DNA of 64,000 nucleotides from Heterodontus francisci (GCF_036365525.1 NC_090395.1:65683326-65747325); one strand, 5' to 3'. Counted from the stretch's first letter, positions 1,481 through 64,000 are shown. Numbers and translations are program-made. Notes: generated from the letters alone by a model not told the origin.

Positions 1481-2530
1481 GAGAAGCTCAACACTATCCA
1501 GGACAAAGCAGCCTGCTTGATTGGCACCTAATCCACCATCTTAAACAAGGTGATCCTTTATACCAATGCTATAATGGAGAGATGAACTACAACAGGTAGT
1601 TTGATGGGAACAAGGTCAAGTAGGTTTTTCCCTTGTGTTGGTTCTCTCACCAATGTCCTCAGACCCAGTCAGGCAACTATGTCCTTCGGAATTCAACCAA
1701 CTCAGTTAGCAGTGGTGCTACCAAGCTACTTTAGGTGATGAACACTGAAGTTCCCTCGCTCAGAGTACTTTCAGTGTCCTTGTTACATTCAGTGATTCTT
1801 CCAAGTGGTGTTCAGCATGGAAGACTTCTGATTCCTTGATTGAGGGAGGGTGGTAGGTGACAATTAGCAGGATTCCTTTGCCCATGTTTGACTTGACACT
1901 TTGAGACTTCATGTGGTCCGCAGTGAATGTTGAGGACTCTTGGACCAGTTTCTCCTGAGTGGATACTCCTCTTCCGTCACCTCTGGTGGATCTGTCCTGC
2001 CAGTGGGACAGGACATAACCAGGGATGGTAATCCAGAAGTCTGGAACATTAGCTGAAACGTATGATTCTGTGAGTGTTAATATATCAGACTGTTGCTTGA
2101 CTGGGTCTGTGGGACAACTCTCCTAATTTTGGAAAAGTCCCCTGATGTTCATGAGGAGGACTTTGCCGTGTCAACTGAGTTCGGTATGCTATAGTCATGC
2201 CTGGTGCCTAGATGGAAACAGGATGGTCCATCCAGTTATATACTTATTCGACTTTCTCACAGCCATTTGCGACTGAATGGCATGCAAGGCCAAGTTAAGA
2301 GTCAACCACATGGCTGTGAATCCAGAGTCACACACAGACCATACTGGGTAACAACAGCTGGGCATTAAAGCAGTTGGATTTTGATGAGAATCTGATGCTT
2401 TCATGGTTACATGGCTGATATTAGCTTTTTCATTCCAGATTTGTTTAATTAATTGAATTTAAATTCCCCAGTTGTCTGGTGGGTTCCGAACTCATGTCTC
2501 TGTCAATAGTCTCGGTCTCTGAATTACTAA
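1481..2530 (-). mobile_element. Older tRNA-headed LINE fragment (head + EN, minus strand) with a short inverted RT-end piece at 1481-1547; paralog at about 44200-47515
   Basis: Reverse complement resembles the head (..TAGTAATTCAGAG..GAGTTCGGAACCC..) and the EN N-terminus; shared by both gene copies. Confidence 0.65.
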
Positions 2531-4089: not shown

Positions 4090-6211
4090 ATACCAAAAGC
4101 CGAGGATGGCAGAGGGAGATTCCAGGGTAACTCCACAGTTCAGCAATGCCTCCCTGCTCACTCTCCTCCAGGCTGTGCGGGCTATGTGGGAGGTCCTTTT
4201 CACCAGTGCCGGCAGAAGAGGCCCTCCCCCTGAACAAGGCAGTCTGGTTGGAGATGGCAGAGGAGGTGAATAGCCAAGGGGCCTTCCACTGTCAAAGGGT
4301 CCAGTGCTGGAACGGGATGAAGGAGCACTCCTCCAGCCAGCTGGGGCACGCTAGCCCTCGTGTGCACAGGCTATGAGCACCAAAGTCATCAACAGCCAAA
4401 GGGCAATCAGATCAGCAGCCTTCCTCCAGTCAGGCTGCTAGCGCAGAGGTTGCACCAAGAAGGGACAACCTCTCCATTTACAGAGAACACACTGACACAA
4501 ATGGGAATGCACGGGTGTCACAGTAATGTAAATATGTCTTTCATTAAATGTTCCTCACCAACATATGTGTCCTTTTCTCTGTGTGAATGATGTGTGCCAG
4601 CATGTAGCACCAATGTCACATCCCTTTGCACCTTTGGATCTTCAGGAGAGCCAACGTGTGCAATAACAATTGCTATGCCACCATTACTCAGTGAGTGTCT
4701 CCACAGATGCAGTGACATGGACATTGGCTCAGTCAGCTGCTGCCTCTAATGGTTTACACAGGGTTGCTGCAGATGTGGACTGGTGCACAGCAGGTGAGCG
4801 AGGGGGACGTGTGGCTTGCAGAGCTCATGTCGGTTCCTATGGAGCAGACAGCCTTTGTCTGATAAGCTACTGCCGTACATCCCTAGCTCACTGCTAGCCC
4901 TGCGTGCAGAGCCTGGGTGCCAATTTCCCTCCCAAGCATCTTTCATGTTGTAGGTCTTCAGCGTCCTCACAGTCTGAGGAGGAATCCTGTTGATGTCTCT
5001 CCTCATCATACCAGGCCTGGCCCCTGCTAGGTGCGTAGTTGTGCAAAGCAGCAAAGAAAGGAGATGGCCTTTTTGGTCCGTAGTACAGGGCATCACCCTA
5101 TCCATCCAGGCACTGAAGACGCTCTTTCAGCATGCTGATCTCCTGCTCAATAGTGGCTCATGTAGCTCAGTGGCTGGCGTTCTATCTCTCCTCTGCAGCA
5201 AGGGATAGCCTTTATCTCTAAGGAGCCACCCCTCTATCTGAGCCAGTTCAGTGAACAGAAGTGACAGCTGGGACCGGCGCAGGCCTCAGGTGTCATGGAA
5301 GCGGGCACAGATTTGCATGAAGCATCTGCGTTGATCACATACCAGCTTCACCTAGATTGAGAGGGCTCCTTTAATGGTGACGTCTGCGGGTGGTAGCCTG
5401 GCAGGAGGCCTGATGGCCACATGACTGCAGTCTATGAACATTATAAACTATGGTTCTCCGGCAATGGTGCTGAAACTGATGGCCCTCTGAGCCTGGCTGT
5501 GAGAGTCCGTCCTGAAGTGGACATACTCACTGGCCTTCCGGTGCAGGGCATTGGTGACCTCCCTGATGCAGCAGTGCATTGCTGACTGTGTGACCCCACA
5601 AAGGTTTCCAGTGGGCCCCTGGAAAGCTGTAGAGGAGTCAAGCTTGAGAACTGCTGCCACTATGAGGACCAAAGGCATAGGATGTCCACTGAAGCCCATG
5701 GGCTGCAGGTCATCTTTGAGCAGGGCATAGAGATGTGTCACCACCCTCTCTACATGTACAATCACCTCTGACACTGGTGCTCTGACATCCGATGGCATGT
5801 CATGCAATTTTAATGTCGAGCTCCCCTTGGGGGCTGCTGTTCACAACCGGAGGCCTCTACGTGGATCGCACCTGCCTGTTGATTTTGCCTCTGGTGCATA
5901 TGGATCCTCACGAGCAGAGGATCACACAATGTAGGATGAGCCAGACCTATTTCCATGTGATAAATAAAGTTGAACCCTTTATGTATTCGAAGAAGTTCTA
6001 AGTAAAATCAGGAAGAGTCAATGGAGAGGCAACGGGCTGCATAATCTGCGGAGGTAAGTACCGTTTAACATATTCTAATTGGGGTGCCGCCGCAGGTAAT
6101 TTGTGGCGGGGCCTTCTCGACTTCACGGGTCAAGGCGGGCCTCTCCCTGCAGAATTTTGTCGGCCTCCAGACCCTGACCCGTGGCATTGAGGGGCCGGTA
6201 ATATTCAGCCC
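4090..6211. mobile_element. PIF/Harbinger transposon remnant: DDE transposase (minus, about 5030-5810) converging on a Myb/SANT-like gene fragment (plus, about 4150-4320)
   Basis: HPMP..FQGPTGNLCGVTQSAMHCCIREVT, GWLLRDKGYPL, IEQEISMLKERLQCLD; WLEMAEEV..VQC; terminal GGGCTGAATATT (reverse complement) ending at 6211; copy A only. Confidence 0.8.
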
Positions 6212-7859: not shown

Positions 7860-8105
7860 GAGAAGGATTTTTTTCACCCAGAGAGAGGTGGGCTTCTGGA
7901 ACTCACTGCCTGAAAGGGTAGTAGAGACAGAAACCATCATCACATTTAAAAACACTTGGATAGGCACTTGAAGCGCCATAACTTAAAGGGCCATAGACCA
8001 AGAGCTGGAAGGCAGAATTAGACTGAATAGCTCATTGTCAGCTACCACGGACACGATGGGACGAATGGCTTCTTTCTGTGGCTTAAATCTTTCCATGTTT
8101 CTATG
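7860..8105 (+). mobile_element. CR1 3' end; paralog at about 50065-50310
   Basis: FFTQREVGFWNSLPE followed by a CR1-type tail. Confidence 0.7.
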
Positions 8106-8540
8106 TTAAGAAAGAAGGATAGTGTTGTGTAAGGACCTGAAAGGGTTCATGTTAGAGACAGTGAGAGCAACGCCTCCCACAGAAGTGATGATGATGTAAC
8201 AGTCACATGGTAATGGGCTTTGGAAGAAGAGAGTAGCAGCACAAAGGATGCTAGCTAGAGAGGCTTATGGAAAGTGTCAATCGAGATGTGTGACTACTAA
8301 GTCATCCGTTCACCTATCCCGACTTTGAAACTTTATCAACAATCTCCTAGCTATTACTACAACAACAACACACACAAAGGGTGCATGTGATGTGATGATA
8401 TGGGTTTGACAAGATAGATTGTAGGGGATGGAATCTATGTAATTGTGCACCTGTACTCACCTTTCCTGATTGTTGAGGTCAGTAATGTGTATCTGCACTG
8501 AGTCCAGGAACATGGTACAACACTCCTGCTGCTGACCTCA

Positions 8541-8865
8541 CACAGTGGTGCAGTGGCTAGCACTGCAGCTTCACAGCTCCAGCAATCTGGGTTCGGTTCT
8601 GGGTACTGCCTGTGTGCAAGTTCTCCCTGTGACCATGTGGGTTTCCGTCGGGTGCTCTGGTTTCCTCCCACAGCCAAAGACTTGCAGATTGATAAGTAAA
8701 TTGGCCATTGTAAATTGCCCCTAGTGTCGGTAGGTGGTAGGAAAATTGAGGGGATGTGGTAGGGAGTAGGGGGTTAATGTAGGATTAGCATAAATGGGTG
8801 GTTGTTGGTTGGCACAGACTCAGTGGGCTGAAGGGCCTGTTTCAGTGCTGTATCTCTCTATGACT
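8541..8865 (+). mobile_element. V-SINE (HE1-like): tRNA head, V domain, CR1-like tail; copy A only
   Basis: GGTTTCC..GGGTGCTCTGGTTTCCTCCCACA..AAAGAC core; tail GGGCTGAAGGGCCTGTTTC..GTGCTGTA. Confidence 0.8.
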
Positions 8866-8974
8866 TCTATGTTGAGCTAATGCCAGCAGCGAGTGAAAGA
8901 TGATCATGTGTATAATGATCACTTAAAGCACACTTACCATGACAGTTCTAATTCACATCTTTACTCTCCCACAG

Positions 8975-9449
8975 GATTTACCGGAATGATTCCGGGTTGA
9001 GGGAGTTCAGCTACTTGGATAGATTGGAGAAGCTGGGGTTATACTACTTGGAGAAGAGAGGTTGCGAGGCAGTTTGATGCAGGTGTTCAAAATCATGAGA
9101 GGTCTCGACAGAGTAGATAGAGAGAAACTATTCCCATTGGTGGAAGGGTCAAGATGCAAAGGTCATAGATTTAAAGTGATTGGCAAAAGAACCAAATGGT
9201 GACATGAGGAGAAACTTCTTTATGCAGTGAGTGGTTATGATCTGGAATGCACCGCCTGAAAGGGTGATGGAGGCAGATTCAATCATGCCTTACGAATGGG
9301 AATTGGATAGATACCTGAAGGGAAAAATTCACAGGGCTACAGGAAAAGGGTGATGATGGGGGACCAACAAAATTGCGTTTGCAGAGTGTTGGCATGGATA
9401 CATGGACAGAATGACTTCCATCTGTGGTGTAACCATTCTATTTTTCTCT
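8975..9449 (+). mobile_element. CR1 3' fragment; longer paralog at 50610-51518
   Basis: LDRLEKLGLYYLEKR; QPQLEYCVQF in copy B. Confidence 0.75.
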
Positions 9450-9909: not shown

Positions 9910-12362
9910 GGGGAGGCAGACTAGACTAGTAACCTAGAGACCCAGAGTATTGCTCTGGGGCCATGGGTTCGAATCCCACCACAGCAGAAGGTGGAAATTG
10001 AACGCAATTAATAAATCTGGAATTAAATGCTGGTCTAATGATGGCCATGAAACCATTGTTGATTGTTGTAAAAACCCATCTCGTTCACTAATGTCCTTGA
10101 GGGAAGGAAATCTGCTGTCCTTACCTGGTCTGGCCTACATGTGACTCCAAATCCACAGCAATGTGGTTGACTTTTAATGCCCACTGAGAAGCCCTAGCAA
10201 GCTTCTCAGTTGCATCAAACCACTAGAAAGTCAATAAGAAATGAAACTGGACAGACCACCTGGCATCGACCTAAGCACCGGAAGCGACAATGGCAAACTC
10301 AGCCCTGTCGACCCTCCAAAGTCATCCTTACTAACATCTGGGGGCTTGTGCCAAGGTTGGGAGAGCTGTCCCACAGATGAGTCAAGCAATAGCCTGACAT
10401 AGTCATTCTCACGAAATCATATCTTACAGACAAAGTCCCAGACACCTCTATCGCCTTCCCCGGGTATGTCCTGCCCCACTGGCAGGACATACCCACCAGA
10501 GGTGGTGGCACAGTGGTATACAGTCAGAAGGGAGTTGCCCTGGGAGTCCTCAACATCGACTCTGGATGCCTTGAAGTCTCATGGCATCAGGTCAAACATG
10601 GGCAAGGAAACCTCCTGCTGATTACCACCTACTGCCCACCCTCAGCTGATGAATCAGTACTCCTCCATGCTGAACACCACTTGGAGGAAGCACTGAGGGT
10701 GGTGAGGGCACAGAATGTACTCTGGGTGGGGGACTTCAATATCCATCACTAAGAGTGGCTCGGTAGCACCATTGCTGGCCGAGTCCCAAAGGACATAACT
10801 GCTAGAGTGGGGCAGTGGCAGGTGGTGAGGGAACCAACAAGAGGGAACAACCTACTTGACCTTGTCCTCACCAATCTGCCTGTTACAGATGCATCTGTCC
10901 ATGATAGTATTGGTAGGAGTGACCACAACACAGTCCTTGTGGAGACGAAGTCCAGTTTGCACACTGAGAGTACCTTCCATCGTGTTGTGTGGCACGACCA
11001 CCATACTAAATGGGATAGATTTCAAACAGATCTAGCAACACAAAACTGAGCATACATGAGGCGCTGTGAGCCATCAGCAGCAGCAGAATTGTACTCAACC
11101 GCAATCTATAACCTCATGGCCCAGCATATCCCCACTCTACCACCACCGTGACCTCATTACAGCCTTGGTTCAAACATGGAAAAAAGAACTGAACTCAAGA
11201 GGTGAGGTGAGAGTGACTGCCCTTGACATCAAGGCAGCATTTGGCAGAGTATGGCATCAAGGAGCCCTAGCAAAACTGAAGTCAATGGGAATCAAGGGGA
11301 AAACTCTCTGCTGGTGGGAGACATACCTCGCGCAAAAGAAGATGGTTGCGGTTGTTGGAGGTTAATCATCTGAGATCCAGGACATCACTCAGGGTAGTTT
11401 CCTAGATCCAACCATCTTCAGCTGCATCATCAATGACATTCCTACAATCATAAGGTCAGAAGTGGGGATGTTCGCTGACGGTTGCACAATGTTCAGCAAA
11501 ATTCATGAATCCTCAGATACTGAAGCAGTCCATGTAGAAATGCAGCAAGACCTGGACAAAATCCAGGCTTGGGCTGGTAAGTGGCAAGTAACATTCATGC
11601 CACATAAGTGCCAGGCAATGACTATCTCCAACAAGAGAGAATCTAACCATCTCCCCTTGACATTCAATGGCATTACCATCGCTGTCAACCCCACTATCAA
11701 CATCCTGGGGTTCACCGTTGACCAGAAAATGAACTGGACCAGCCATATTAATACTGTGGCTACAAGAGCAGGTCAGAGATTAGGAATTCTGTGGCTAGTA
11801 ACTCACCTCCTGACTCCCCAAAGCCTGTCCACCATCTACAAGGCACAAGTCAGTGATGGAATACTCTCCACTTGCCTGGATGGGTGCAGCTCCAACAACA
11901 CTCAAGAAGCTTGACACGATCCAGGACAAAGCAGCCCGCTTGATTGGCACCCCATCCACAACATTCACTCCCTCCACCACCGACGCACAGTGGCAGCAGT
12001 GTGTTCCATCTACAAGATGCACTGCAGCAACACACTGAGGCTCCTTATTCGGCACCTTCCAAACCCACGACCTCTACCACCGAGAAAGAGAAGGGCAGCA
12101 TATGCAAGGGAACACCACCACCTGCAAGTGCCCCTCCAAGCCACACACCATCCTGACTTGGAACTATGTCACCATTTTTTCACTGTCTCTGGGTCAAAAT
12201 CCTGCAACTCCCTTCCTAACAGCACTGTGGGTGTACCAACTTCACATGGGCTGCAGCGGTTCAAGAAGGTGGCTCACAACTTCTTTCACAAGTGCAATTA
12301 GGGATGGGCAATAAATGCTGTCCTAACCAGCGATGCCCACATCCTATGAATGAATAAGAAAT
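9910..12362 (+). mobile_element. tRNA-headed LINE copy with head, EN, RT and tail; internal deletion at about 11145; nested in a Harbinger MITE; copy A only
   Basis: B box GGTTCGAATCC at 9966-9976, EN and RT motifs, tail GCCCACATCC..GAATGAATAAGAAA; absent at the paralogous site near 52005. Confidence 0.9.
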
Positions 12363-14371: not shown

Positions 14372-16230
14372 CATAAGATATTTGTAGATGTACAGGAAAT
14401 ATGGAATCAGTTTCATATTTATCAATACCACAGCTGTACCATCCTGTATCCTCAAAGCGAAGATCCTTCATTGCCAGAAGCTGGCCGAGCGCGTCTACCC
14501 TGAGGCACAGTGTGGCTTTCGTGCAGAGAGATCGACTATTGACATGCTGTTCTCCCTTCGTCAGCTACAGGAGAAATGCCGTGAACAACAGATGCCCCTC
14601 TACATTGCTTTCATTGATCTCACCAAAGCCTTTGACCTCGTCAGCAGACGTGGTCTCTTCAGACTACTAGAAAAGATCGGATGTCCACCAAAGCTACTAA
14701 GTATCATCACCTCATTCCATGACAATATGAAAGGCACAATTCAACATGGTGGCTCCTCATCAGAGCCCTTTCCTATCCTGAGTGGTGTGAAACAGGGCTG
14801 TGTTCTCGCACCCACACTTTTTGGGATTTTCTTCTCCCTGCTGCTTTCACATGCGTTCAAATCCTCTGAAGAAGGAATTTTCCTCCACACAAGATCAGGG
14901 GGCAGGTTGTTCAACCTTGCCCGTCTAAGAGCGAAGTCCAAAGTACGGAAAGTCCTCATCAGAGAACTCCTCTTTGCTGACGATGCTGCTTTAACATCTC
15001 ACACTGAAGAATGCCTGCAGAGTCTCATCGACAGGTTTGCGTCTGCCTGCAATGAATTTGGCCTAACCATCAGCCTCAAGAAAACGAACATCATGGGGCA
15101 GGATGTCAGAAATGCTCCATCCATCAATATTGGCGACCACGCTCTGGAAGTGGTTCAAGAGTTCACCTACCTAGGCTCAACTATCACCAGTAACCTGTCT
15201 CTAGATGCAGAAATCAACAAGCGCATGGGTAAGGCTTCCACTGCTATGTTCAGACTGGCCAAGAGAGTGTGGGAAAATGGCGCACTGACACGGAACACAA
15301 AAGTCCGAGTGTATCAGGCCTGTGTCCTCAGTACCTTGCTCTACGGCAGCGAGGCCTGGACAACGTATGCCAGCCAAGAGCGACGTCTCAATTCATTCCA
15401 TCTTCGCTGCCTTCGGAGAATACTTGGCATCAGGTGGCAGGACTATATCTCCAACACAGAAGTCCTTGAAGCGGCCAACATCCCCAGCTTATACACACTA
15501 CTGAGTCAGCGGCGCTTGAGATGGCTTGGCCATGTGAGCCGCATGGAAGATGGCAGGATCCCCAAAGACACATTGTACAGCGAGCTCGCCACTGGTATCA
15601 GACCCACCGGCCGTCCATGTCTCCGTTATAAAGACGTCTGCAAACGCGACATGAAATCGTGTGACATTGATCACAAGTCGTGGGAGTCAGTTGCCAGCAT
15701 TCGCCAGAGCTGGCGGGCAGCCATAAAGACAGGGCTAAATTGTGGCGAGTCGAAGAGACTTAGTAGTTGGCAGGAAAAAAGACAGAGGCGCAAGGGGAGA
15801 GCCAACTGTGCAACAGCCCCAACAAACAAATTTCTCTGCAGCACTTGTGGAAGAGCCTGTCACTCCAGAATTGGCCTTTATAGCCACTCCAGGCGCTGCT
15901 TCACAAACCACTGACCACCTCCAGGCGCGTATCCATTGTCTCTCGAGATAAGGAGGCCCAAAAGAAAAAAAGAAGAAAAGAACCATCCTGTATCCTCAAA
16001 GCGAAGATCCTTCATTGTAACAACAAATTTTCCTTGTGTCTTGTTATCTGTGATTGATATTCTTCCTCGCTGTCCACCTGGCTCATTCGTTTTCACTAAA
16101 TATGTACACTGGTGAGTCCAGCCATGACACCAATATTTCATGTTCGACTGGTAATATCTTTGATAGTGACAATCTATTGTGATCGCTCTTCCCACAACTC
16201 CTGTTACTTTCGTTTTTGCCCACAGTGCAC
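14372..16230 (-). pseudogene. Copy A V1 exon (CD300/pIgR-type Ig V domain) interrupted by an RTE LINE
   Basis: Acceptor CAG|GT at 16230; GALWAKTKVTGVVGRAITIDCHY..KYWCHGWTHQC..GRISITD..DTGW, then the RTE, then YSCGIDKYETDSIFPVHLQISY with donor G|GTAC at 14372. Confidence 0.9.
14474..15981 (+). mobile_element. RTE-clade LINE, 5'-truncated, young; 36-bp TSD (14438-14473 / 15982-16017)
   Basis: PEAQCGFR, FIDLTKAFD, GVKQGC, LLFADD, C-terminal CxxC..H..H; open to 15914; short 3' UTR with A/GAA tail; perfect TSD ACCATCCTGTATCCTCAAAGCGAAGATCCTTCATTG. Confidence 0.95.
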
Positions 16231-25799: not shown

Positions 25800-26100
25800 A
25801 CAATAACTTGCATTTAGATAGCACATTTAACCTAGTAATCCCTCCCAAGATGCTTCACAGGCATGTAATTAGACAAAAATTGTTGCCAAGCCAAAGGTAG
25901 AGACATTCGGTCAGCTGATCAATATTTGGTCAAAAAGAGCAGTCAGTGTTAAGGAGAGGATGCTGGAGTTTTGGACTTGGACAACTCAAGGCATTGTCAT
26001 CAATGGTAAGGCAAATGAAGTGGGAATGCACAAGAAGCCAGAGTTGGAAGAACACAGAGTTCGCAGAAGTGGTTACAAAGATAGGAGGGGTGAGGTCATG
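25800..26100 (-). mobile_element. Old L2-like fragment, continuing at 28456-28870 across the younger LINE
   Basis: VTSRLDYFNALLGGLP in the 28410-28670 frame. Confidence 0.55.
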
Positions 26101-26105
26101 GAGGG

Positions 26106-28455
26106 TTTTTTTTTTATTCATTCAGGGATGTGGGCATCACTGGCTAGGCCAGCATTTATTGCCCATCCCTAATTGCCCTTGAGAAGGTGGTGGTGAGCTG
26201 CCTTCTTGAACTGCTGCAGTCCATTTGGGGTAGGTATACCCACAGTGCTGTTATGAAGGGAATTCCAAGATTTTGACCCAGCGACAGTGAAGGAACGGTG
26301 ATATAGTTCCAAGTCAGGATGGTGTGTGACTTGGAGGGGAACTTGCAGGTGGTGGTGTTCCCATGCATTTGCTGCCCTTGTCCTTCTAGTTGGTAGAGGT
26401 TGCGGGTTTGGAAGGTGCTGTCTAAGGAACCTTGGTGCATTGCTGCAGTGCATCTTGTAGATGGTACACACTGCTGCCACTGTACATCGGTGGTGAAGGG
26501 AGTGAATGTTTGTAGATTGGGAGCCAATCAAGTGGGCTGCTTTGTCCTGGATAGTGTTGAGCTTCTTGAGTGTTGTTGGAGCTGCACCCATCCAGGCAAT
26601 GGGAGAGTATTCCATCACACTCCTGACTTGTACCTTGCAGATGGTGGACAGGCTTTGGGGAGTCAGGAGGTAAGTTGCTCGCCTCAGGATTCCTAGCCTC
26701 TGCCCTGCTGTTGTAGCCACGGTATTTATATGGCTATTCCAGTTCAGTGTCTGGTCAATGGTGACCCCTAGGATGTTGATAGTGGGGGATTCAGTGATGG
26801 TAATGCCGTTGAATGTCAAGGGGAGATGGTTAGATTCGCTCTTGTTGGAGATGGTCATTGCCTGGCACTTGTGTGGCGCGAATGTTACTTGCCACTTATC
26901 AGCACATGCCTGGATATTGTCCAGGTCTTGCTGCATTTCTACAAGGACTGCTTCAGTATCTGAGGAGTCACGAATGGTGCTGAACATTGTGCCATCATCA
27001 GCGAACATCCCCACTTCTGACCTTATGATTGAAGGTAGGTCATTGATGAAGCAGCTGAAGATGGTTGGGCCTAGGACACTGCCCTGAGGAACTCCTGCAG
27101 TGATGTCCTGGAGCTCAGATGATTGACCTCCAACAACCACAACCATCTTCCTTTGCGCTAGGTATGACTCCAGCCAGCAAAGGGTTTTCCCCCTGATTGC
27201 CATTGACCTCAGTTTTGCTAGGGCTCCTTGATGCCATACTCGGTCAAATGCTGCCTTGATGTCAAGGGCAGTCACTCTCACCTCACCTCTTGAGTTCAGC
27301 TCTTTTGTCCATGTTTGAACCAAGGCTGTAATGAGGTCAGGAGCTGAATGGCCCTGGCAGAACCCAAACTGAGCGTCATTGAGCAGGTTATTGCTAAGCA
27401 AGTGCTGCTTGATGGCACTGTTGATGACACCTTCCATCACTTTGCTGATGATTGAGAGTAGGCTGATGGGGCAGTAATTGGCCGGGTTGGACTTGTCCTG
27501 CTTTTTGTGTACAGGACGTACCTGGGCAATTTTCCACATTGCAGGGTAGATGCCATTGTTGTAGCTGTACTGGAACAGCTTGGCTAGGGGCGTGGCAAGT
27601 TCTGGAGCACAGGTCTTCAGTACTATTGCCGGAATCTTGTCAGGTCCCATTGCTTTTGCAGTATCCAATGCCTTCAGTCGTTTCTTGATATCACACGGAG
27701 TGAATCGAATTGGCTGAAGTCTGGCATCTGTGATGCTGGGGACTTCGGGAGGAGGCCGAGATGGATCATCAACCCGGCACTTCTGGCTGAAGATTGTTGC
27801 AAATGCTTCAGCCTTCTCTTTCGCACTGTTGTGCTGGGCTCCCCCATCATTGAGGATGGGGATATTTGTGGAACCACCTCCTCCAGTTAGTTGTTTAATT
27901 GTCCACCATCATTCATGGCTGGATATGGCAGGACTGCAGAGCTTAGATCTGATCCGTTGGTTATGGGATCACTTAGCTCTGTCTATCGCATGCTGCTTAC
28001 GCAGATAGTCCTGTGTTGTAGATTCACTAGGTTGACACCTCATTTTGAGGTATGCCTGGTGCTGCTCCTGGCATGCCCTCCTGCACTATTCATTGAACCA
28101 GGGTTGGTCTCCAGGGTTGATGGTAATGGTAGAGTGGGAGATATGCCGGGCCATGAGATACAGATTGTGGTTGAGTACAATTCTGCTGCTGCTGATGGTC
28201 CACAGTGCCTCATGGATGCCCAGTTTTGCATTGCTAGATCTGTTTGAAATCTATCCCATTTAGCACAGTGGTAGTGCCACACAACACGATGGAGGGTATC
28301 CTCAATGTGAAGGCGGGATTTCGTCTCCACAAGGACTGTGCGGTGGTCATTCCAACCGATACAGTCATGGACACAAGCATCTGTGGCAGGCAGATTGGTG
28401 AGGATGAGGTCAAGTATGTTTTTCCCTCATGTTGATTCCCTCACCAGCTGCCGCA
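26106..28455 (-). mobile_element. Same LINE family, 5'-truncated, 499-aa open RT frame, poly(A) tail
   Basis: ORF 26169-27668; tail matches 12300-12360; inserted in an older L2. Confidence 0.92.
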
Positions 28456-29069
28456 TCTGAACACAAGGATGAGAATTTTATCATGGAAGCATCTGGGGAC
28501 TGGAAGCTAATGTGGACCAGCAAGCAAAGGGTTGAGGAGTGAAGCAGACACAGTGCGAGCAAGGATACAACAGTAGAGATTTGGCTGAGCTTACGTTGAT
28601 GGGGAGTGGAAGATGGGAGGCCACCCAGGAGGGCATTGAAATAGTCGAGTCTGGAGGTAACAATCAGCATGAATGAGGAAATTAGTGGCCAGGGAGGGGA
28701 TGAAATCCGTGGTTAGAGAACAGTGTTTGTGGTGGGGATAAAGATAATGGCTTCAGTCTTCACAATGTTTAATTGGCAGATATTGTGGCTCATTCAGTAC
28801 TGGATGTCGGATAAGCAGCTGGACATGCATAGAGGCAATGGAGGGGTCAAGAGAGATGGTGGTCAAACAGGAGATCAGGCTTCCTGCTTGTTTAAGTCAT
28901 AATTATCAAAATAAAGACCAAATCATAATATAATAAAATTAATATAACAACAGATTTGCAAAAACAAAGAAAATCAAAGTCTTATTTATACCAGCGTATC
29001 TCCTATTCTACGGTAATAAAGGTACATCACTCACATTATGTAAAAGTGTAACATACAATTGGAGCTAAA

Positions 29070-33066: not shown

Positions 33067-36000
33067 TGTTGTGATCCTGTAGTTTTTTGTTCTTTTCCAG
33101 GAAGTATGCAGTGTGCCATTAAAGCTGTAAAAGGATCAGTACTGCTTTTAGAACCAGAAAGCCTCAGGAATTAGAGAAAGTGCATTCCGGTTGCCATAGG
33201 ATACAAATATACAGAGAAGGAACCAACCAGCTTCAAAGAATGCATCCTGGTTACCCTGCAACAGCCATTCGGAGAACAAGGACCAAATATGCAATGTTAC
33301 GATGAACTGTTTGAACTGGCTTTTTATTTTTGATACAGACTGTTCTAACACACAGGCAGCTATTCTGCCAGCATATACTGAAGGAAAGAGAGTGCTCTCT
33401 TGGCTTATTTAAACCCTATTTATTATACTCTCAGAATCCTGATAAATCAAGCCAGATTATTTTCTTAAAAGAAAATAAACAATTACTTTAGCTACTCAAC
33501 TGTATTTGCTGAATTCATTGCTGGAAAAGGAAGAAGTGCATCACTTCAGCTCTTGAAATAGATTACTGACAGTCCTACTGTTGAAGAACTTTTTTTAATC
33601 CCCATCGGACAGCTGTGAGGACTTCAAGCAACCTTGGACTGTTCCACAATGGAAGATTCCATTTCAGCAGGAGCGTAAATCCACAAGGAAACCAACTTTT
33701 TCTATTTGGAATGTTGCTTCTATCTTAGTAGTGTTAGAGAATTTAGTTTTACTAATTAAACATTTAATTTGTTGATCTAAAGACACCTGATTTGGTTAGC
33801 CTGATTCAGGGGATAATAGATGGTCAATTTGGCAGTGTTTTTTTTAATATGGAAGGCTTAAAGTGATATGTTAGGCAATCTGTGGAGGGACGGGACTGAA
33901 TCAACAGTACGTTTCTCCCACTGCAATCAGAATCGTATATTTTGATTGGGGGCTTTGTCTTGAGGGGTCAATCATAACTTATTAATTGGGGGCTTGCTCG
34001 CGGTTGAATCATATTTAGTTCAGTGGCTCGTGGCTGGGATCAGAATCAGACTAATTTGGAGGGCTCACATTTGGAGTCATATTCACTACTTCTTTCTGGG
34101 ATAACATATTTAAATTGAGGTCTTGCATTTGGCCTCATATTTAATTGCACTCGCGTCTGGGATCATAGCAATTGGAAACTCGATTGTTGGGATCTCAATT
34201 TAATGCCAATTACAAAGAAAATAAAAGAACCAGGTGTCTTATATGATAAGGTACAGTCTATACTATTGTAATGGCATTAGTGGTTGCAACAGAGTTTTTG
34301 GGAAAGCAGAATGTTTCCATGAGTGACTTGATAACTTTAACTAAGAACAAATTAAAAGAATTGGCAACGAAAATGGGGTTTGGAATTGAAATTAGGTGCC
34401 AAAAAAGTAGAGATAATTGACATAATAGCTGAACATTCTGGAATTAGTAGAAGAAGATGATGAGGAGGATAATGATGATGATGGGCAATCCGAGGAACAA
34501 GAAGGCAGTAGGTCCAAGAGTGATGCAGTGGTATTGACTAGGATTCATTTAGAAATGAAAAAAACTTGAGGCAGAAAAAGAATTAGGAAAACTTGAATTG
34601 GAAAAAGAGGAAAGGAAAAAAGAAAAAGTGACAGCGATATGAAAACATGAATTGGAAAAAGAGGAAAGGGAGAAAGAGAGGGAACTTAAGTTAAAAGAGA
34701 TGGAACTAAGACAAAAGGGTAGACTTAAATCCTGGGAAAGTTTGGGTCAGGGAGAATCTGAATTTAGATCAGGATCCAGCGGAAAGTTGTTTACATTTAT
34801 ACAGGCTCTTCCTAAGTTCCAGGAAAGGAGCGTAGAGGCATTTTTCATATCTTTTGAAAAAATAGCCAAACAGATGAAATGGCCAAAAGAAAGCAGGACA
34901 CTGCTCATGAAGCTTATGCCATGCTTCCTGAAGAGGCTTCTACAGATTATGAGATGGCAAAAAAGGTTATTCTCACTGCATATGAGTTAGTCCCTGAAGC
35001 TTACCGTCAGAAGTTTAGGAACCTACAGAGATTGGCTGGGCAGACATATTTAGAATTTGAGAGGGTATTGCAAATTACTTTTGACCATTGGATACTGGCA
35101 TTAAAGATGGAAACCACATATGAGAACCTTCCAGAATTGATTCTTTTGGAAGAGTTTAAAAATTCCATTTCTTCAGTAGTGACAATTCATGTAGATAACC
35201 TGAAATTTTTGAAAGCTAGGCAAGCAGCAGAGATTGCTGATGATTTTGAGCTTGTGAATAAGCCAACCTATTTTGTCCGTCACCCCCATAAACCCGAGAA
35301 GGATAGAAAGTGGGAGAATGAAAAGAAGGCTAATAGCCAGGGACAAGAAAGAACAGCTGGGAATGCCCCAGGATCACCTCCTCAGGTCAGAAAGGAAGGT
35401 GCTGAGGGTAGAAGTGAGGTTCGCAAGCCAAAGTGTTATCATTGCAACAAAATAGGTCATCTTTGTTCAGAGTGCTGGAAATTGCGAGATAAACCCATAG
35501 GACTTGTTGGGGTATGCAAAGCTAGTGCAGAGGAAAAGACGATGACTAAAAGTATAGCAGACCAGGCTATAGCTTTAACGACAGCTGTGAAATCAGATAC
35601 TAAAACTAAAATGAATGTAGAGGTTAAGAATACAATACCTGAGCGTTATAATGAATTTTTGTCAAAGGGGAGAGTAACTCCATATTATGTAAGTGAGGCA
35701 GAGACACCTATCATTATACTCAGGGACACAGGAGCAACCCATAAACACTTGCTTGGGAAAGATATAAGGTTTCCACCAGAGAGCGCCTTGAAGGCTAAAG
35801 TTTTAGTTAATGGAATTGGTGGGGAGTATATACCTTTGTATAAAGTATGCCAAGAGAGTGACTTAACATCTGGGATAGTAACTGTAGTGTTATCCACAGT
35901 TTTACAGTAAAGGGAATTGATCTATTCCTAGGAAATGATTTGACTGGATCAAAAGTATCAGTTTCTCCTATTGTTACAGAGGAACCAAGTGAAATTAAGG

Positions 36001-47139: not shown

Positions 47140-47805
47140 ATATGCTTTAGTCATACCTTGTACTTAGGTGGAAACAGGATGGTCCATCCAGTTATATACT
47201 TCTTAGACTTTCTCACAGCCATTTGCAACTGAATGGCATGCAAGGCCGTTTCAGAGGGCAGTTAAGAGTCAACCACATGGCTGTGAATCCAGAGTCACTC
47301 ACAGGCCATACCAGGTAACAACAGCTGATTTCCCTCCCTAAAGGGCATTAAAGCAGTTGGGTTTTGATGAAAATCCGATGCTTTCATGGTCACATGGCTG
47401 ATATTAGATTTTTAATTCCAGATTTTTTTAATTAATTGAATTTAAATTCCCCAGCAGTCTGTGGAATTTGAACTCTTGTCTCTGGGTCATTAATCCAGGC
47501 CTTTGAATTACTAAGGGATATGGGGATAGTGTGGGAAAATGTCATTGAGGCACAAGATCAACCATGGTCCAGTTGCATAGTGGAGCAGGCTCTAGGGGCC
47601 AAATGGCCTATTCCTGCTCCTATTTCCTATGCTCCAATGTTGCGATGTAACATGACTACTATGGTATGTGACCTCTGCCAACTACCTGACAGACTCTGCA
47701 CTGCTGTGGAGCCTCGGGATATTGGAGCTGTCATGTTTCTCCCAGAAAAAACATTGACCAGACATTTCAGTAAAGAGTAATAAAGTAAATCACTGAGAAA
47801 TGTAC

Positions 47806-60129: not shown

Positions 60130-61359
60130 ACATATGAACATATGAATTGGGAGCAGGAGTAGGCTACTCGACCCCTCGAGCCTTTTCCATCATTCAATAA
60201 GTTCATGGCTGAACTGATTTCTCCACATTACCACCTACCCCTGATAACCTTCCACCCCCTTGCTTATCAAGAATCTATCTATCTCTGCCTTAAACTTATT
60301 CAAAGACTCTGCTTCCACTGCCTTTTGAGGAAGAAAGTTCCAAATACTCACGACCCTCTGAGAGAAAAAATTTCTCCTCATCTCTGTCTTAAATGGGCAA
60401 CCCCTTATTTTTAAACAGTGACCCCTGGTTCTAGATTCTCCCACATGGGGAAACATCCTTTCCACATCCACCCTGTCAAGACCCCTCAGGATCTTATATG
60501 TTTCAATCAAGCCGTCTCTTACTCTTCCAAATTCCAGTGGATACAAACCTAGCCTCTCCAATCTTTCCTCGTAAGATAGCCCGCCCCTTCTAGGTATTAG
60601 TCTAGTAAACCTTCTTTGAACTGCTTCCAAAGCTGTTACATCCTTCCTTAAATAAGGAGACCAATGCTATACACAGTACTCATGATGTGGTCTCACCAAT
60701 GTCCTGTATAGCTGAAGCATAACCTCCCTACTTTTGTATTCAATTCCCCCCGCTTTCCTAATTATGTGCTTTACCTACATACTAACCTTTTGCAATTCAT
60801 GCACTAGGACACCCAGATCCCTCTGCATCTTAGAGCTCTGCAATCCCTCACCATTTAGATAATATCCTTCTTTGTTATTCTTCCTGCCAAAATGGACAAC
60901 TTCGCATTTTCCCACATTATACTCCATCTGCCAGATTTTAGCCTTCTCACTTAACCTATCTATATCCCTTTCTAGTCTCCTTATGTCCTCTTCACAACTT
61001 ACTTTCCAACCTATTTTTGTGTCATCAGCAAATTTAGCAAGCATACCGTCAGTCCCTTCATCTAAGTCATTTATATAAATTGTAAAAAGTTGAGGCCCCA
61101 GGACAGATCCCTGTGGCACACCACTCGTTACATCTTGCCAACCAGAAAATGACCCATTTAGGTCTAGTCTCTGTTTCCTGTTAGCTAGCCAATCGTCTAT
61201 CCATGCCAATATGTTACCCCCTACACCATGAGTTTAGTTTTGCGATAACCTTTGTTGTGGCACCTTATCAAATGCCTTCTGGAAATCTAAGTACAGTACA
61301 TCCACCGGTTCCCCTTCATCCACTGCACATGTGACTCCCTCAAAGAACTCCAATAAATT
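60130..61359 (-). mobile_element. CR1 LINE RT and 3' end, cut off at its 5' side by the tRNA-headed LINE
   Basis: GVPQGSVLGPQLFTIYINDLD, KFADDTK, RRNFFSQRVVSIWN. Confidence 0.88.
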
Positions 61360-64000
61360 GGGGTGGCGTAGCATAGTGGTGTTGTCACTGGACTAGTAAT
61401 CCAGAGACCCAGGGTATTGCTCTGGGAACATGGGTTCAAATCCCACCACAGCAGAAGGTGGAATTTGAATTCAATTAATAAATCTGGAATTGAAAGCTAG
61501 TCTACTGATGGCTATGAAAATTGTTGTAAAAACCCATCTGGTTCACTAATGTCCTTTAGGGAAGGAAATCTGCTGTCCTACCTGGTCTGGCCTACATGTG
61601 ACTCCAGACCCACAGCAATGTGGCTGACTCTTAAATGCCCTCTGAAATGGCTTAGCAAGCCACTCACTTGTATTAAACCACTACAAAGTCTAAGAAAAAG
61701 AATGAAACCAGACAGACCACCCGACATCGGCCTAGGCACCGGAAATGACAATGGCAAACCCAGCTCTGTCGACCCTGAAAAGTCCTTCTTACTAACATCT
61801 GGGGGCTTGTGCCAAAGTTGGGAGAGCTGTCCCACAGACTACATACCTTATGGACAATGTCCCAGACACTGCCTTCACCATCCCTGCGTACGTCCTGTCC
61901 CACCAGCAGGACAGACCCAGCAGAGGTGGCGGGACAGTGGTACACAGTCTGGAGGGATTCCCCCTGGCAGTCCTCAACATTGACTCCGGACCCCATGAAG
62001 TCTCATGGCATCAGGTCAAACATGGGCAAGGAAACCTCCTGCTGATTACCACCTACTGCCCTCCCTCAGCTGATGAATCAGTACTCCTCCATGTTGATCA
62101 CCACTTGGAGGAAGCACTGAGGATGGCAATGGTGCAGAATGTACTCTGGGTGGGGGACTTCAATATCCATAACCAAACATGACTCAGTAGCACCACTACT
62201 GACCGAGCTGGCCGAGTCTTAAAGGGCATAACTGTGAGACTGGGTATGTGGCAGGTGGTGAGGGGAACCAACAAGAGGGAAAAACATACTTGACCTCGTC
62301 CTCACCAATCTGCCTGCCGCAGATGCATCTGTCCATGACAGTATTGGTAAGAGTGACCACTGCACAATCCTTTTGGAGACGAATTCCCGCCTTCACGTTG
62401 AGGATACCCTCCATCGTATTGTGTGGCACTACCACCGTGCTAAATGGGATAGATTTTGAACAGATTTAACAATGCAAGTCTGGGCATCCATGAGGCGCTG
62501 TGGACCATCAGCTGCAGCAGAATTGTACTCAAACACAATCTGTAACCTCATGGCCCAGCATGTCCCCCACTCTACCATTGCCATCAAGACAGGAGACCAA
62601 CCCTGGTTCAATGAAGAGTGCAGGAGGGCATGCTAGGAGCAGCACCAGGCATACCTCAAAGTGAGGTGTCAACCTGGTGAAGCTACAACCCAGGACTACT
62701 TGTGTGAAAAAACTGCAGTATGCAATAGACAGAGCTAAGCAATCCCATAACCAATGGATCAGATCCTAAGCTCTGCAGTCCTGCCACGTCCAGCCGTGAA
62801 TGATAGTGGGCAATTAAACAACTAACTGGAGGAGGTGGCTCCACAAATATTCCCATCCTCAATGAAGGCGGACCTCACCACATCATTGCAAAAGACAAGG
62901 CTGAAGCATTTACAACAATCTTCAGCCAGAAGTGCCGAATTGATGATCCATCTCGGCCTCCTCCTGAAGTCCCCAGTATCACAGATGCCAGAATTCAGCC
63001 AATTCGATTCACTCCGCGTGATATCAAGAAACAACTGAAGGCATTGGATACTGCAAAGGCTATAGGCCCTGACAATATTCCGGCAATAGCGCTGAAGACC
63101 TGTGCTCCAGAACTTGCCGCGCCCCTAGCATCTTCCCAGCAATGAGGAAAATTGCCCAGGTATGTCTTGTACACAAAAAGCAAGACAAGTCCAACCTAGC
63201 CAAATAGCACCCCATCAGTCTACTCTCAATCATCAGTAAAGTTCTGGAAAGTATCATCAACAGTGTGATCAAGCGGCACTTGCTTAGCAATAACTTGCTT
63301 AGTCACGCTCAGTTTGGGTTCCGTCAGGGCCACTCAGCTCCTGATCTCATTACAGCCTTGGTTCAAACATGGACAAAACAGCTGAACTCAAGAGGGGAGG
63401 TGAGAGTGACTGCTCTTGACATCAAGGCACCATATGATCGAGTATGGCATCAAGGAGCCTTAGCAAAACCGAAGTCAATGGGAACCGGGGGGAAAAACTC
63501 TCCACTGGTTGGAATCATACCTAGCGCAAAGGAAGATGGTTGTGGTCGTTGGAGGTCAATCATCTCAGCTCCAGGACATCACTGCAGGAGTTCCTCAGGG
63601 TAGTGTCCTAGGCCCAACCATCTTCAGCTGCTTCATCAATGACGTTCCTTCAATCATAAGGTCAGAAGTGGGGATGTTCGCTGATGATTGCACAATGTTC
63701 ACTATTCTCGACGCCTCAGATACTGAAGCAGTCCGTGTAGAAATGCAGCAAGACCTGGACAATATCCAGGCTTGGGCTGATAAGTGGCAAGTAATATTCG
63801 CGCCACACAACTCAAGAGGTAAGGTGAGAGTGACTGCCCGGCAATGACCATCTCCAACAAGAGAGAATCTAACCATCTCCCCTTTACATTCAACGGCATT
63901 ACCATTGCTGAATCCCCCACTATCAATATCCTAGGGGTTACCATTGACCAGAAACTGAACTGGAGTAGCCATATAAATACCGTGGCTACAAGAGCAAGTT
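61360..64000 (+). mobile_element. tRNA-headed single-ORF LINE (APE-EN + RT, CR1/L2-group), 5' end intact, runs off the right edge
   Basis: A box 61369-61379, B box 61433-61443, then EN (RGGGTVV, VGDFN, LDLVLT, SDH) and RT (QFGFR, ALDIK, GVPQGSVLGP, FADD) with frameshifts. Confidence 0.9.
61361..61450 (+). promoter_or_regulatory. tRNA-Thr(AGT)-like Pol III type-2 promoter head of the LINE
   Basis: TAGCATAGTGG fits TRGCNNARYGG; CTGGA-CTAGTAA-TCCAG anticodon-like arm; long extra hairpin CCCAG..CTGGG; GGTTCAAATCC. Confidence 0.75.

What the first reader, a model, noticed from the sequence alone, without database searches (positions are those of the whole stretch)
26106..28455. The LINE's sense strand avoids TTTT (the Pol III terminator) over more than 2 kb
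Seen: reading 26161-28440 I found no AAAA on the plus strand (no T4 on the element's sense strand) but about ten TTTT runs (sense A4). The sense T4 runs in the two younger sister copies (10172, 12175, 62371, 62454) each sit where another copy has C or G, so they are copy-specific decay mutations. The RTE in this window does contain sense T-runs (about 14818-14831). A rough estimate at about 22% T predicts around 4 runs here and around 6 per full element, so zero is suggestive rather than conclusive. Known: four or more Ts terminate vertebrate Pol III. Inference: the coding sequence has been purged of terminators so Pol III can read through about 3.3 kb. This supports the previous finding independently.
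Basis: partly seen in the sequence, partly recalled or inferred. Interest (0 to 1): 0.85.

Follow-up and report, generated by a model that had tools for sequence, protein, structure and literature searches.

The report
T-run-free sense strand of tRNA-headed LINE
A very abundant protein-coding jumping gene (LINE) that starts with a tRNA-like promoter has almost no runs of T on its coding strand, unlike 77 related LINEs and other LINEs nearby, which is what would be expected if RNA polymerase III had to read through all 3.3 kb, although that transcription is not shown.

Summary
Copy B (26106-28455, minus strand) has no sense T4 in 2.34 kb. The four T4 runs in copies A and C are copy-private.

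Zero T4 alone is weak evidence. The expected count is 3.5 by base composition (P=0.02). It is only 1.3-1.9 after dinucleotide or codon-aware shuffling (P=0.11-0.22).

The real signal is broader and much stronger:
- T3+ runs: 4 observed against 10.6 by codon permutation (P=0.002).
- 5-mers with at least 4 T: 1 against 8.6-11.1 (P=0.002-0.009).
- Codon junctions that would create T3+: 1 against 8.7 (P=0.0006).
- Non-canonical Pol III terminators (T3VT/TVT3): 0 in both B and C.

The depletion is specific to T and to the sense strand. It is absent for pyrimidine or GT tracts, and absent from the RTE and another LINE in the window. It is also absent from 77 related LINE ORFs (lowest ratio 0.71, against 0.09 here). 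Neutral decay re-creates T runs in older copies.

Together with the tRNA-like head (A and B boxes) that four copies in the window carry in front of the endonuclease ORF, this fits selection against Pol III termination. I give that about 50%. Pol III transcription itself is untested.

The scan noted the same element on other DNA of this genome (s1-872189, s1-872185, s1-871833).

The parts
26116..28455 (-). Copy B of the LINE. It is 5'-truncated, covers the RT region to the 3' end, and is the least decayed of the three copies. It has zero sense T4, five sense T3 and one 5-mer with at least 4 T.
26106..26115 (-). A10 run that ends copy B, after ...TGAATGAATAA.
26169..27668 (-). Intact 499-aa ORF with a reverse transcriptase domain (Pfam RVT_1, E=3e-34). 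TTC:TTT is 11:2.
26169..28154 (-). Single-frame coding stretch of 662 codons with 3 internal stops, used for the codon-aware tests. T3+ is 4 against 10.6 expected. Junction-made T3+ is 1 against 8.7.
25937..28907 (.). Longest interval free of AAAA on the plus strand (2,971 nt), and the longest A4- or T4-free interval in the window.
27246..27248 (-). One of only four T3 runs shared by at least two copies. The others are at 27366-27368, 27801-27803 and 28247-28249. All four are exactly T3. The two inside the intact ORF (27246-27248 and 27366-27368) are in-frame TTT codons.
9920..12361 (+). Copy A. It has part of the head, the body, the EN region, an internal deletion of about 790 nt at 11142/11149, the RT region and the tail. 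Its private T runs are at 10172 (T4) and 12175 (T6).
61362..64000 (+). Copy C. It runs from position +1 of the tRNA-like head through EN into RT and is cut by the window end. Its private T4 runs are at 62371 and 62454. It has no T3VT or TVT3 motif.
61368..61447 (+). tRNA-like head of copy C (Rfam tRNA, 21.8 bits, below the gathering score of 29, E=0.043). The A box TAGCATAGTGG is at 61369-61379 and the B box GGTTCAAATCC at 61433-61443.
9966..9976 (+). Perfect B box GGTTCGAATCC in the head of copy A.
1700..2529 (-). Older, diverged copy (about 66% identity) with the same architecture of head, body and EN ORF. This shows the head has long been part of the lineage.
47140..47479 (-). Second fragment of the older subfamily (head and body, then the 5' part of the LINE).

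Best explanation
The active lineage of this LINE family is kept almost free of T runs on its sense strand by selection at the nucleotide level. It avoids not only T4+ but also T3 and T clusters, including the weak non-canonical Pol III terminators.

The most likely reason is that full-length RNA is made by RNA polymerase III. Transcription would start at the tRNA-derived head (A and B boxes) that forms the element's 5' end. Any T run in the roughly 3.3-kb unit would then cut the transcript short and stop that copy from leaving descendants.

Shown: the depletion, its specificity and the presence of the head. Inferred: that Pol III is the polymerase. It is also open whether the Pol III transcript serves as mRNA, or only as a retrotransposition template used in trans, like a giant SINE.
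For: (1) Copy B has zero sense T4 in 2.34 kb, and no T4 is shared between copies.

(2) The depletion goes beyond codon usage and protein sequence. T3+ is 4 against 10.6 by codon permutation (P=0.002) and 9.5 by synonymous permutation (P=0.004). Codon junctions that make T3+ number 1 against 8.7 (P=0.0006), while isolated T|T junctions number 9 against 12.4 (not significant).

(3) 5-mers with at least 4 T number 1 against 8.6-11.1. T3VT/TVT3 motifs number 0 against about 4 in B and 0 against 6.6 in C (P=0.001). These motifs are the sub-optimal human Pol III terminators of Orioli et al. 2011 (PMC3141230).

(4) The effect is specific. A, C and G clusters show no comparable depletion, though A3+ runs are mildly low. 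Pyrimidine tracts, GT runs and sense A4 runs are all normal.

(5) The effect is confined to this family. The RTE and another LINE in the same window give ratios of 0.9-1.25. For 77 related LINE ORFs the ratio of observed to codon-permuted T clusters ranges from 0.71 to 1.59, against 0.09 here. None of the 77 has zero T4.

(6) Neutral decay re-creates T runs. Private T3+ runs number 1, 6 and 5 in copies with 3.2%, 4.6% and 7.6% private change, so genomic mutation bias does not maintain the depletion.

(7) A tRNA-like head with A and B boxes sits at the 5' end and runs into the EN ORF in copies A and C and in two fragments of an older subfamily.
Against: No transcript evidence was obtained. All four runs laid, including the three labelled 'RNA?', are kept as contigs, which cannot show starts or polymerase type.

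The depletion starts at T3, and the data have no power to show a specific cliff at T4: with so few T3 runs, fewer than one T4 is expected anyway. The head and body module itself tolerates two ancestral T3 runs in 340 nt.

No Pol III transcript of this length and no Pol III-made LINE mRNA is known (own knowledge). Uncapped RNA is poorly translated. No terminator lies inside the element's 3' end.

All three copies belong to one subfamily and one window, so they are not independent. I ran about a dozen statistics post hoc. Contig depth dips at the junction between body and ORF (61670-61763), so many copies may lack the head.
Confidence: 0.5

Rival explanations
1. The element is an ordinary Pol II-transcribed LINE, and U runs are selected against for another RNA-level reason. 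Candidates are binding of U-tract proteins, nuclear decay targeting, pairing with A runs or the A-rich tail, and ribosome slippage. The tRNA-like head would then be a captured 5' UTR or an element that affects chromatin or Pol II.
For: The depletion begins at T3, below the canonical Pol III signal. The 3' end carries AATAAA motifs typical of Pol II 3' processing. A 3.3-kb coding RNA is normal for Pol II.
Against: Pyrimidine tracts, GT-rich runs and A4 runs are not depleted, so avoidance of splice acceptors, poly(A) downstream elements or nucleosome-excluding tracts does not fit. No such depletion is seen in 77 relatives or in the two other LINE families of the window, which should face the same RNA-level pressures. 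This rival gives no reason why only the tRNA-headed family shows the effect.
Confidence: 0.25
2. A mutation bias tied to the replication cycle removes T next to T at each round of retrotransposition, without selection on runs. Examples would be reverse-transcriptase error or editing of the RNA:cDNA hybrid.
For: T is the rarest base (20.9%). TT observed/expected is 0.75, against 0.97 in the RTE.
Against: The deficit is concentrated in junctions that would create T3+ (1 against 8.7), not in isolated T|T junctions (9 against 12.4). The conditional P is 0.04. T3+ is also below the dinucleotide-preserving expectation in all three copies (P=0.01-0.03). No known enzyme produces this pattern (own knowledge).
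Confidence: 0.1
3. The result is chance plus composition: a T-poor, TTC-preferring ORF that happens to lack T4.
For: Zero T4 alone gives P=0.11-0.22 under dinucleotide, codon or synonymous nulls. Other stretches of the window of 1.5-1.9 kb also have zero T4.
Against: The T3+ and T-cluster tests give P=0.0006-0.009 with codon usage and protein sequence held fixed. The element is about 8-fold below the lowest of 77 relatives.
Confidence: 0.07

Closest known systems
tRNA-derived SINEs of cartilaginous fishes with LINE-type tails (SacSINE1 / HE1 type; PMC5499810)
   Same: They have a tRNA-derived head with A and B boxes at the 5' end, no internal T4 on the sense strand, and a 3' tail shared with a partner LINE. 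Contig depth over the head and body here is several-fold higher than over the start of the ORF, as expected if a SINE shares this module.
   Different: This element is about 3.3 kb long and encodes endonuclease and reverse transcriptase, so it is autonomous. SINEs are a few hundred bases long and non-coding.
CR1/L2/Jockey-type LINEs (APE endonuclease plus RT, internal Pol II promoter)
   Same: The domains match: RVT_1 at E=3e-34 and Exo_endo_phos_2 weakly at E=3.5e-4. The ORF is 30-46% identical to 77+ LINE ORFs. Copies are 5'-truncated, and the tail is of the (TGAA)-like type.
   Different: The relatives show normal T-run content (ratio 0.71-1.59). No B box was found on the sense strand upstream of their ORFs in the fetched loci. 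This family has a tRNA-like head and a roughly 10-fold deficit of T clusters.
R2 elements (own knowledge)
   Same: R2 is a precedent for a LINE whose RNA is not made by Pol II: it is co-transcribed by Pol I with rRNA and translated without a cap.
   Different: R2 depends on its rDNA target and a self-cleaving ribozyme, has a restriction-like endonuclease, and carries no promoter of its own. The element here would carry a mobile Pol III promoter.
T+ SINEs (B2, Dip, Ves; PMC8466645)
   Same: They are Pol III transcripts that carry AATAAA and become polyadenylated. The tail here also contains AATAAA.
   Different: T+ SINEs carry their own T-rich terminator next to the AATAAA. No terminator lies within this element's 3' end.
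L1Tc/NARTc and ingi/RIME pairs of trypanosomes (PMC1874656)
   Same: In these pairs an autonomous LINE and its short non-autonomous partner share the same 5' internal promoter module.
   Different: That module (Pr77) is Pol II-dependent and is not derived from a tRNA.

Membership tests
Pol III type-2 (tRNA/SINE-like) transcription unit | A box (TRGCNNAGTGG) near position +8 | tested here: met
   TAGCATAGTGG lies at 61369-61379, which is position 8 of the tRNA-like head. It is missing from copy A because of 5' truncation.
Pol III type-2 (tRNA/SINE-like) transcription unit | B box (GGTTCGANNCC) 30-60 nt or more downstream of the A box | tested here: met
   GGTTCAAATCC lies at 61433-61443 (one mismatch). 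GGTTCGAATCC lies at 9966-9976 (perfect).
Pol III type-2 (tRNA/SINE-like) transcription unit | Head recognisably derived from a tRNA | tested here: inconclusive
   The Rfam tRNA match scores 21.8 bits, below the gathering score of 29 (E=0.043 for a 461-nt search). It has a 22-nt insertion in the variable region. ARAGORN finds no tRNA.
Pol III type-2 (tRNA/SINE-like) transcription unit | No T4+ terminator inside the transcribed unit | tested here: met
   Copy B has zero T4 in 2.34 kb, and no T4 is shared by two copies over the roughly 3.3-kb alignment. Two of the four T4 comparisons rest on a single other copy.
Pol III type-2 (tRNA/SINE-like) transcription unit | A T-run terminator at the 3' end of the unit | tested here: not met
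   The element ends ...TGAATGAATAA(A)n with no T run. The first T run after copy B is about 170 nt into the flank. Many SINEs also rely on flanking terminators (own knowledge).
Pol III type-2 (tRNA/SINE-like) transcription unit | Transcription by Pol III (inhibitor profile, 5'-triphosphate, Pol III/TFIIIC occupancy) | not testable with these tools
   All four runs laid are kept as contigs, which cannot show starts, ends, strand or polymerase.
APE-type non-LTR retrotransposon (LINE) | Reverse transcriptase domain | tested here: met
   Pfam RVT_1, E=3.1e-34, 118.9 bits.
APE-type non-LTR retrotransposon (LINE) | N-terminal apurinic-like endonuclease domain | tested here: inconclusive
   A 79-aa stop-free piece of copy A matches Exo_endo_phos_2 at E=3.5e-4, 20.9 bits, below the cut-off of 27.4. 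By tblastn the region aligns to the endonuclease part of homologue P0001, which carries PF14529.
APE-type non-LTR retrotransposon (LINE) | Many dispersed, 5'-truncated copies | tested here: met
   The window holds three copies plus two older fragments. 391,352 contig pieces were laid in one DNA run, with depth rising toward the 3' end.

The most novel reading that the evidence does not exclude
[quoted passage not shown] Its 3.3-kb coding strand has been purged of both canonical and weak Pol III terminators, so the polymerase can reach the 3' tail. The LINE and its SINE partner would then be long and short versions of one Pol III transcription unit.
Probability: 0.45. Interest if true: 0.92.

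Novelty: new variant of a known kind. Interest (0 to 1): 0.78.

Why it matters
All LINEs studied so far use Pol II, or Pol I read-through in the case of R2. Pol III is thought to be limited to short non-coding RNAs.

A hugely successful vertebrate LINE whose coding strand carries a sequence-level footprint of terminator avoidance would show three things. Pol III can make kilobase-long, possibly translated, RNAs in vivo. LINEs can escape Pol II-directed silencing by borrowing a SINE promoter. SINE/LINE pairs can share both ends.

The footprint found here gives a simple computational screen for other such elements. It consists of a T-cluster deficit beyond codon usage, strand-specific and T-specific.

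Tried and rejected
Tools and searches that gave nothing useful:
The DNA of the protein-database homologues could not be fetched. Relatives came from the search for related loci on metagenome contigs instead.
- ARAGORN and Rfam at gathering threshold found nothing in the window.
- Read laying returned only contigs. The three 'RNA?' runs have the same depth profile as the DNA run, so they gave no evidence on transcript starts or polymerase. Only 40 of 284 difference rows were printed, so the T4 positions in copy C could not be checked against the family at large.
- Four literature searches found no report of a tRNA-headed or Pol III-transcribed LINE. That shows absence from the held library only.

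Explanations rejected:
- Avoidance of splice-acceptor or polypyrimidine tracts, of GT-rich poly(A) downstream elements, of AT runs, and of strand-symmetric poly(dA:dT): none of these is depleted.
- Phe codon bias alone: TTC:TTT is 11:2, but against the other NNC/NNT pairs Fisher P is 0.14.
- Genomic mutation bias: decay re-creates T runs.

Other limits:
Ancestral states were inferred only by noting which runs are shared between copies.
- A search for an in-frame start codon of the EN ORF was inconclusive because the copies are decayed.

Full report
**What is there.** The stretch 26106-28455 is a 5'-truncated copy (copy B) of a non-LTR retrotransposon on the minus strand.
- It holds an intact 499-aa ORF at 26169-27668 with a reverse transcriptase domain (RVT_1, E=3e-34).
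- A single reading frame continues up to 28154, giving 662 codons with three stops.
- The copy ends ...TGAATGAATAA followed by A10.

Two sister copies lie on the plus strand.
- Copy A is at 9920-12361 and has an internal deletion.
- Copy C is at 61362-64000 and is cut by the window end.
- Pairwise identity among the three copies is 87-91%.

Copies A and C begin with a tRNA-like head.
- The A box TAGCATAGTGG is at 61369-61379.
- The B box is at 61433-61443 in copy C and at 9966-9976 in copy A.
- The Rfam tRNA match scores 21.8 bits, below the gathering score.
- The head is followed by a SINE-like body that runs straight into the endonuclease ORF.

Two fragments of an older subfamily, at about 66-73% identity, have the same architecture (2529->1700 and 47479->47140, minus strand). 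The head is therefore an old, integral part of the lineage.

The family is extremely abundant. One DNA run yielded 391,352 contig pieces on copy C, with depth rising toward the 3' end.

**Check of the observation.**
- The plus strand of 26106-28455 holds no AAAA, so the sense strand has no T4.
- The AAAA-free interval 25937-28907 (2,971 nt) is the longest A4- or T4-free interval among 719 in the window, whose median is about 95 nt. Copies A and C supply the next longest sense-T4-free intervals.
- The four T4+ runs in A and C are each absent from the other aligned copy or copies. Two of these comparisons rest on a single other copy.
- The RTE carries T5 and T4 runs at 14818, 14827 and 14878.

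**Is zero T4 more than chance?** On its own, barely.

| Null model | Expected T4+ | P |
|---|---|---|
| Mononucleotide shuffle | 3.5 | 0.02 |
| Dinucleotide-preserving shuffle | 1.5 | 0.18 |
| Codon permutation | 1.5-1.9 | 0.11-0.19 |
| Synonymous-codon permutation | 1.3-1.7 | 0.12-0.22 |

Other stretches of the window (4099-6003 minus, 7875-9440 plus) also reach zero T4 over 1.5-1.9 kb. They have normal T3 counts, so they are ordinary extremes.

**The stronger signal.** The deficit starts earlier than T4.
- T3+ runs in copy B number 5, against 16.6 by mononucleotide shuffle (P<0.001) and 9.8 by dinucleotide shuffle (P=0.03). Copies A and C show the same.
- In the 662-codon frame, T3+ is 4 against 10.6 by codon permutation (P=0.002) and 9.5 with the protein sequence fixed and synonymous codons permuted (P=0.004).
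- Codon junctions that would create a T3+ run number 1 against 8.7 (P=0.0006). T|T junctions that make no run number 9 against 12.4, which is not significant. The avoidance therefore acts on runs, not on the TT dinucleotide, on codon usage or on amino-acid content.
- Only four T3 runs are shared by two or more copies over the roughly 3.3-kb alignment. All four are exactly T3, and the two that lie in the intact ORF are in-frame TTT codons.

I took from the literature the sub-optimal terminators of human Pol III: T3VT2, T2VT3, T3VT and TVT3 (Orioli et al. 2011, PMC3141230). I then counted them.
- They number 0 in B, against about 4 expected.
- They number 0 in C, against 6.6 expected (P=0.001).
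- 5-mers with at least 4 T number 1 in B, against 8.6-11.1 (P=0.002-0.009).

**Specificity.** No comparable deficit exists for A, C or G clusters or for A4 runs; A3+ runs are mildly low. Pyrimidine tracts (5 against 4.5), GT runs and the antisense strand at the T4 and T-cluster level are normal. This argues against avoidance of splice acceptors, of poly(A) downstream elements, or of nucleosome-excluding tracts.

**Controls.**
- In the same window, two RTE ORFs and a third LINE (60256-61326, minus strand) have observed/expected ratios of 0.9-1.4.
- From metagenome contigs I fetched 80 loci that encode relatives (30-46% identity), and 77 of them have open frames of at least 1.2 kb.
- Their TTT observed/expected ranges from 0.72 to 2.02, against 0.22 here. 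Their T3+ ratio to codon permutation ranges from 0.77 to 1.34, against 0.37 here.
- Their T-cluster ratio ranges from 0.71 to 1.59, against 0.09 here. None has zero T4, including those with only 21-25% T.
- Only one of the 80 loci has a B box on the sense strand, and it lies downstream of the ORF.

**Selection or mutation?** Private T3+ runs number 1 in B, 6 in C and 5 in A. This rises from the least decayed copy (B) to the two more decayed ones. Where copy C differs from the bulk of the family it mostly has T where the family has C. Neutral decay thus re-creates T runs, and the active lineage is held away from that equilibrium. A bias tied to the replication cycle cannot be excluded. It does not explain why junctions that would form runs are hit and isolated TT dinucleotides are not.

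**Interpretation.** The sense strand is kept free of T runs, the effect is specific to T and to that strand, and it occurs only in the family that carries a tRNA-type promoter at its 5' end. I put this at about 50%.

Caveats:
- No transcript data were usable. All laid runs were contigs.
- The deficit begins at T3, and there is no power to see a cliff at T4.
- The head and body module itself keeps two T3 runs that are shared with the older subfamily.
- No terminator lies in the element's 3' end.
- A 3.3-kb Pol III transcript that must also be translated has no precedent. R2 is made by Pol I, and T+ SINEs are polyadenylated (PMC8466645). These show that parts of the scheme exist.
- A variant avoids the translation problem: the Pol III RNA may serve only as a template that is copied in trans.
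- All evidence comes from one subfamily in one window.

**Context from the scan.** First-stage notes on other DNA of this genome (s1-872189, s1-872185) and on copy C (s1-871833) describe the same tRNA-headed LINE without TTTT in 3.3 kb. I could not read those sequences, and they are not independent tests.

Noticed in passing
window 1700-2529 (-) and 47140-47479 (-): These are fragments of an older, diverged subfamily (66-73% identity) with the same architecture of tRNA-like head, body and EN ORF. The head-LINE fusion is therefore ancient and was propagated, not a single chimeric insertion.
   Followed up: partly
window 61640-61900 (+), 10190-10470 (+): In copies A and C the endonuclease frame (…KV(L/I)LTNIWGLVP…) has no in-frame ATG between the last upstream stop and the domain start. 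The nearby ATG (MAN(P/S)ALSTL…) sits in another frame. This may be decay or a non-standard start, and the copies are too damaged to decide.
   Followed up: partly
window 61388-61857 (+): Summed contig depth is 1.4-2.4 million over the head and body. It drops to 0.2 million at 61670-61763, the junction between body and ORF, and recovers to 0.5-1.4 million in the EN region. This suggests a much more abundant SINE that shares the head and body, and many LINE copies that lack this 5' end.
   Followed up: no
window 61470-61482 (+): An AATAAA lies within about 120 nt of the element's 5' end, inside the SINE-like body (…caattaataaatctgg…). This is unusual for a Pol II mRNA leader. Two AATAAA/ATTAAA motifs occur in the first 884 nt, against 0.4 expected.
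   Followed up: no
window 7875-9440 (+): This 1,566-nt stretch at 26% T has no T4 (4.25 expected) but a normal T3 count (18 against 17.8). It is a mosaic of other repeat fragments upstream of copy A. The interval was selected post hoc, so it is probably a chance extreme.
   Followed up: partly
window 60256-61326 (-): A different LINE (RT ORF, 28% identical to homologue P0001) ends about 35 nt upstream of the 5' end of copy C. Its T-run content is normal, and it served as an in-genome control.
   Followed up: partly
window 11142-11149 (+): Copy A has an internal deletion of about 790 nt relative to copies B and C, removing the region that corresponds to 27340-28126 of copy B.
   Followed up: no
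window 34879-35910 (+): A 343-aa ORF with a SCAN domain (E=2.6e-7), rich in T runs (8 T4+). It is probably part of another mobile element or of a domesticated gene.
   Followed up: no
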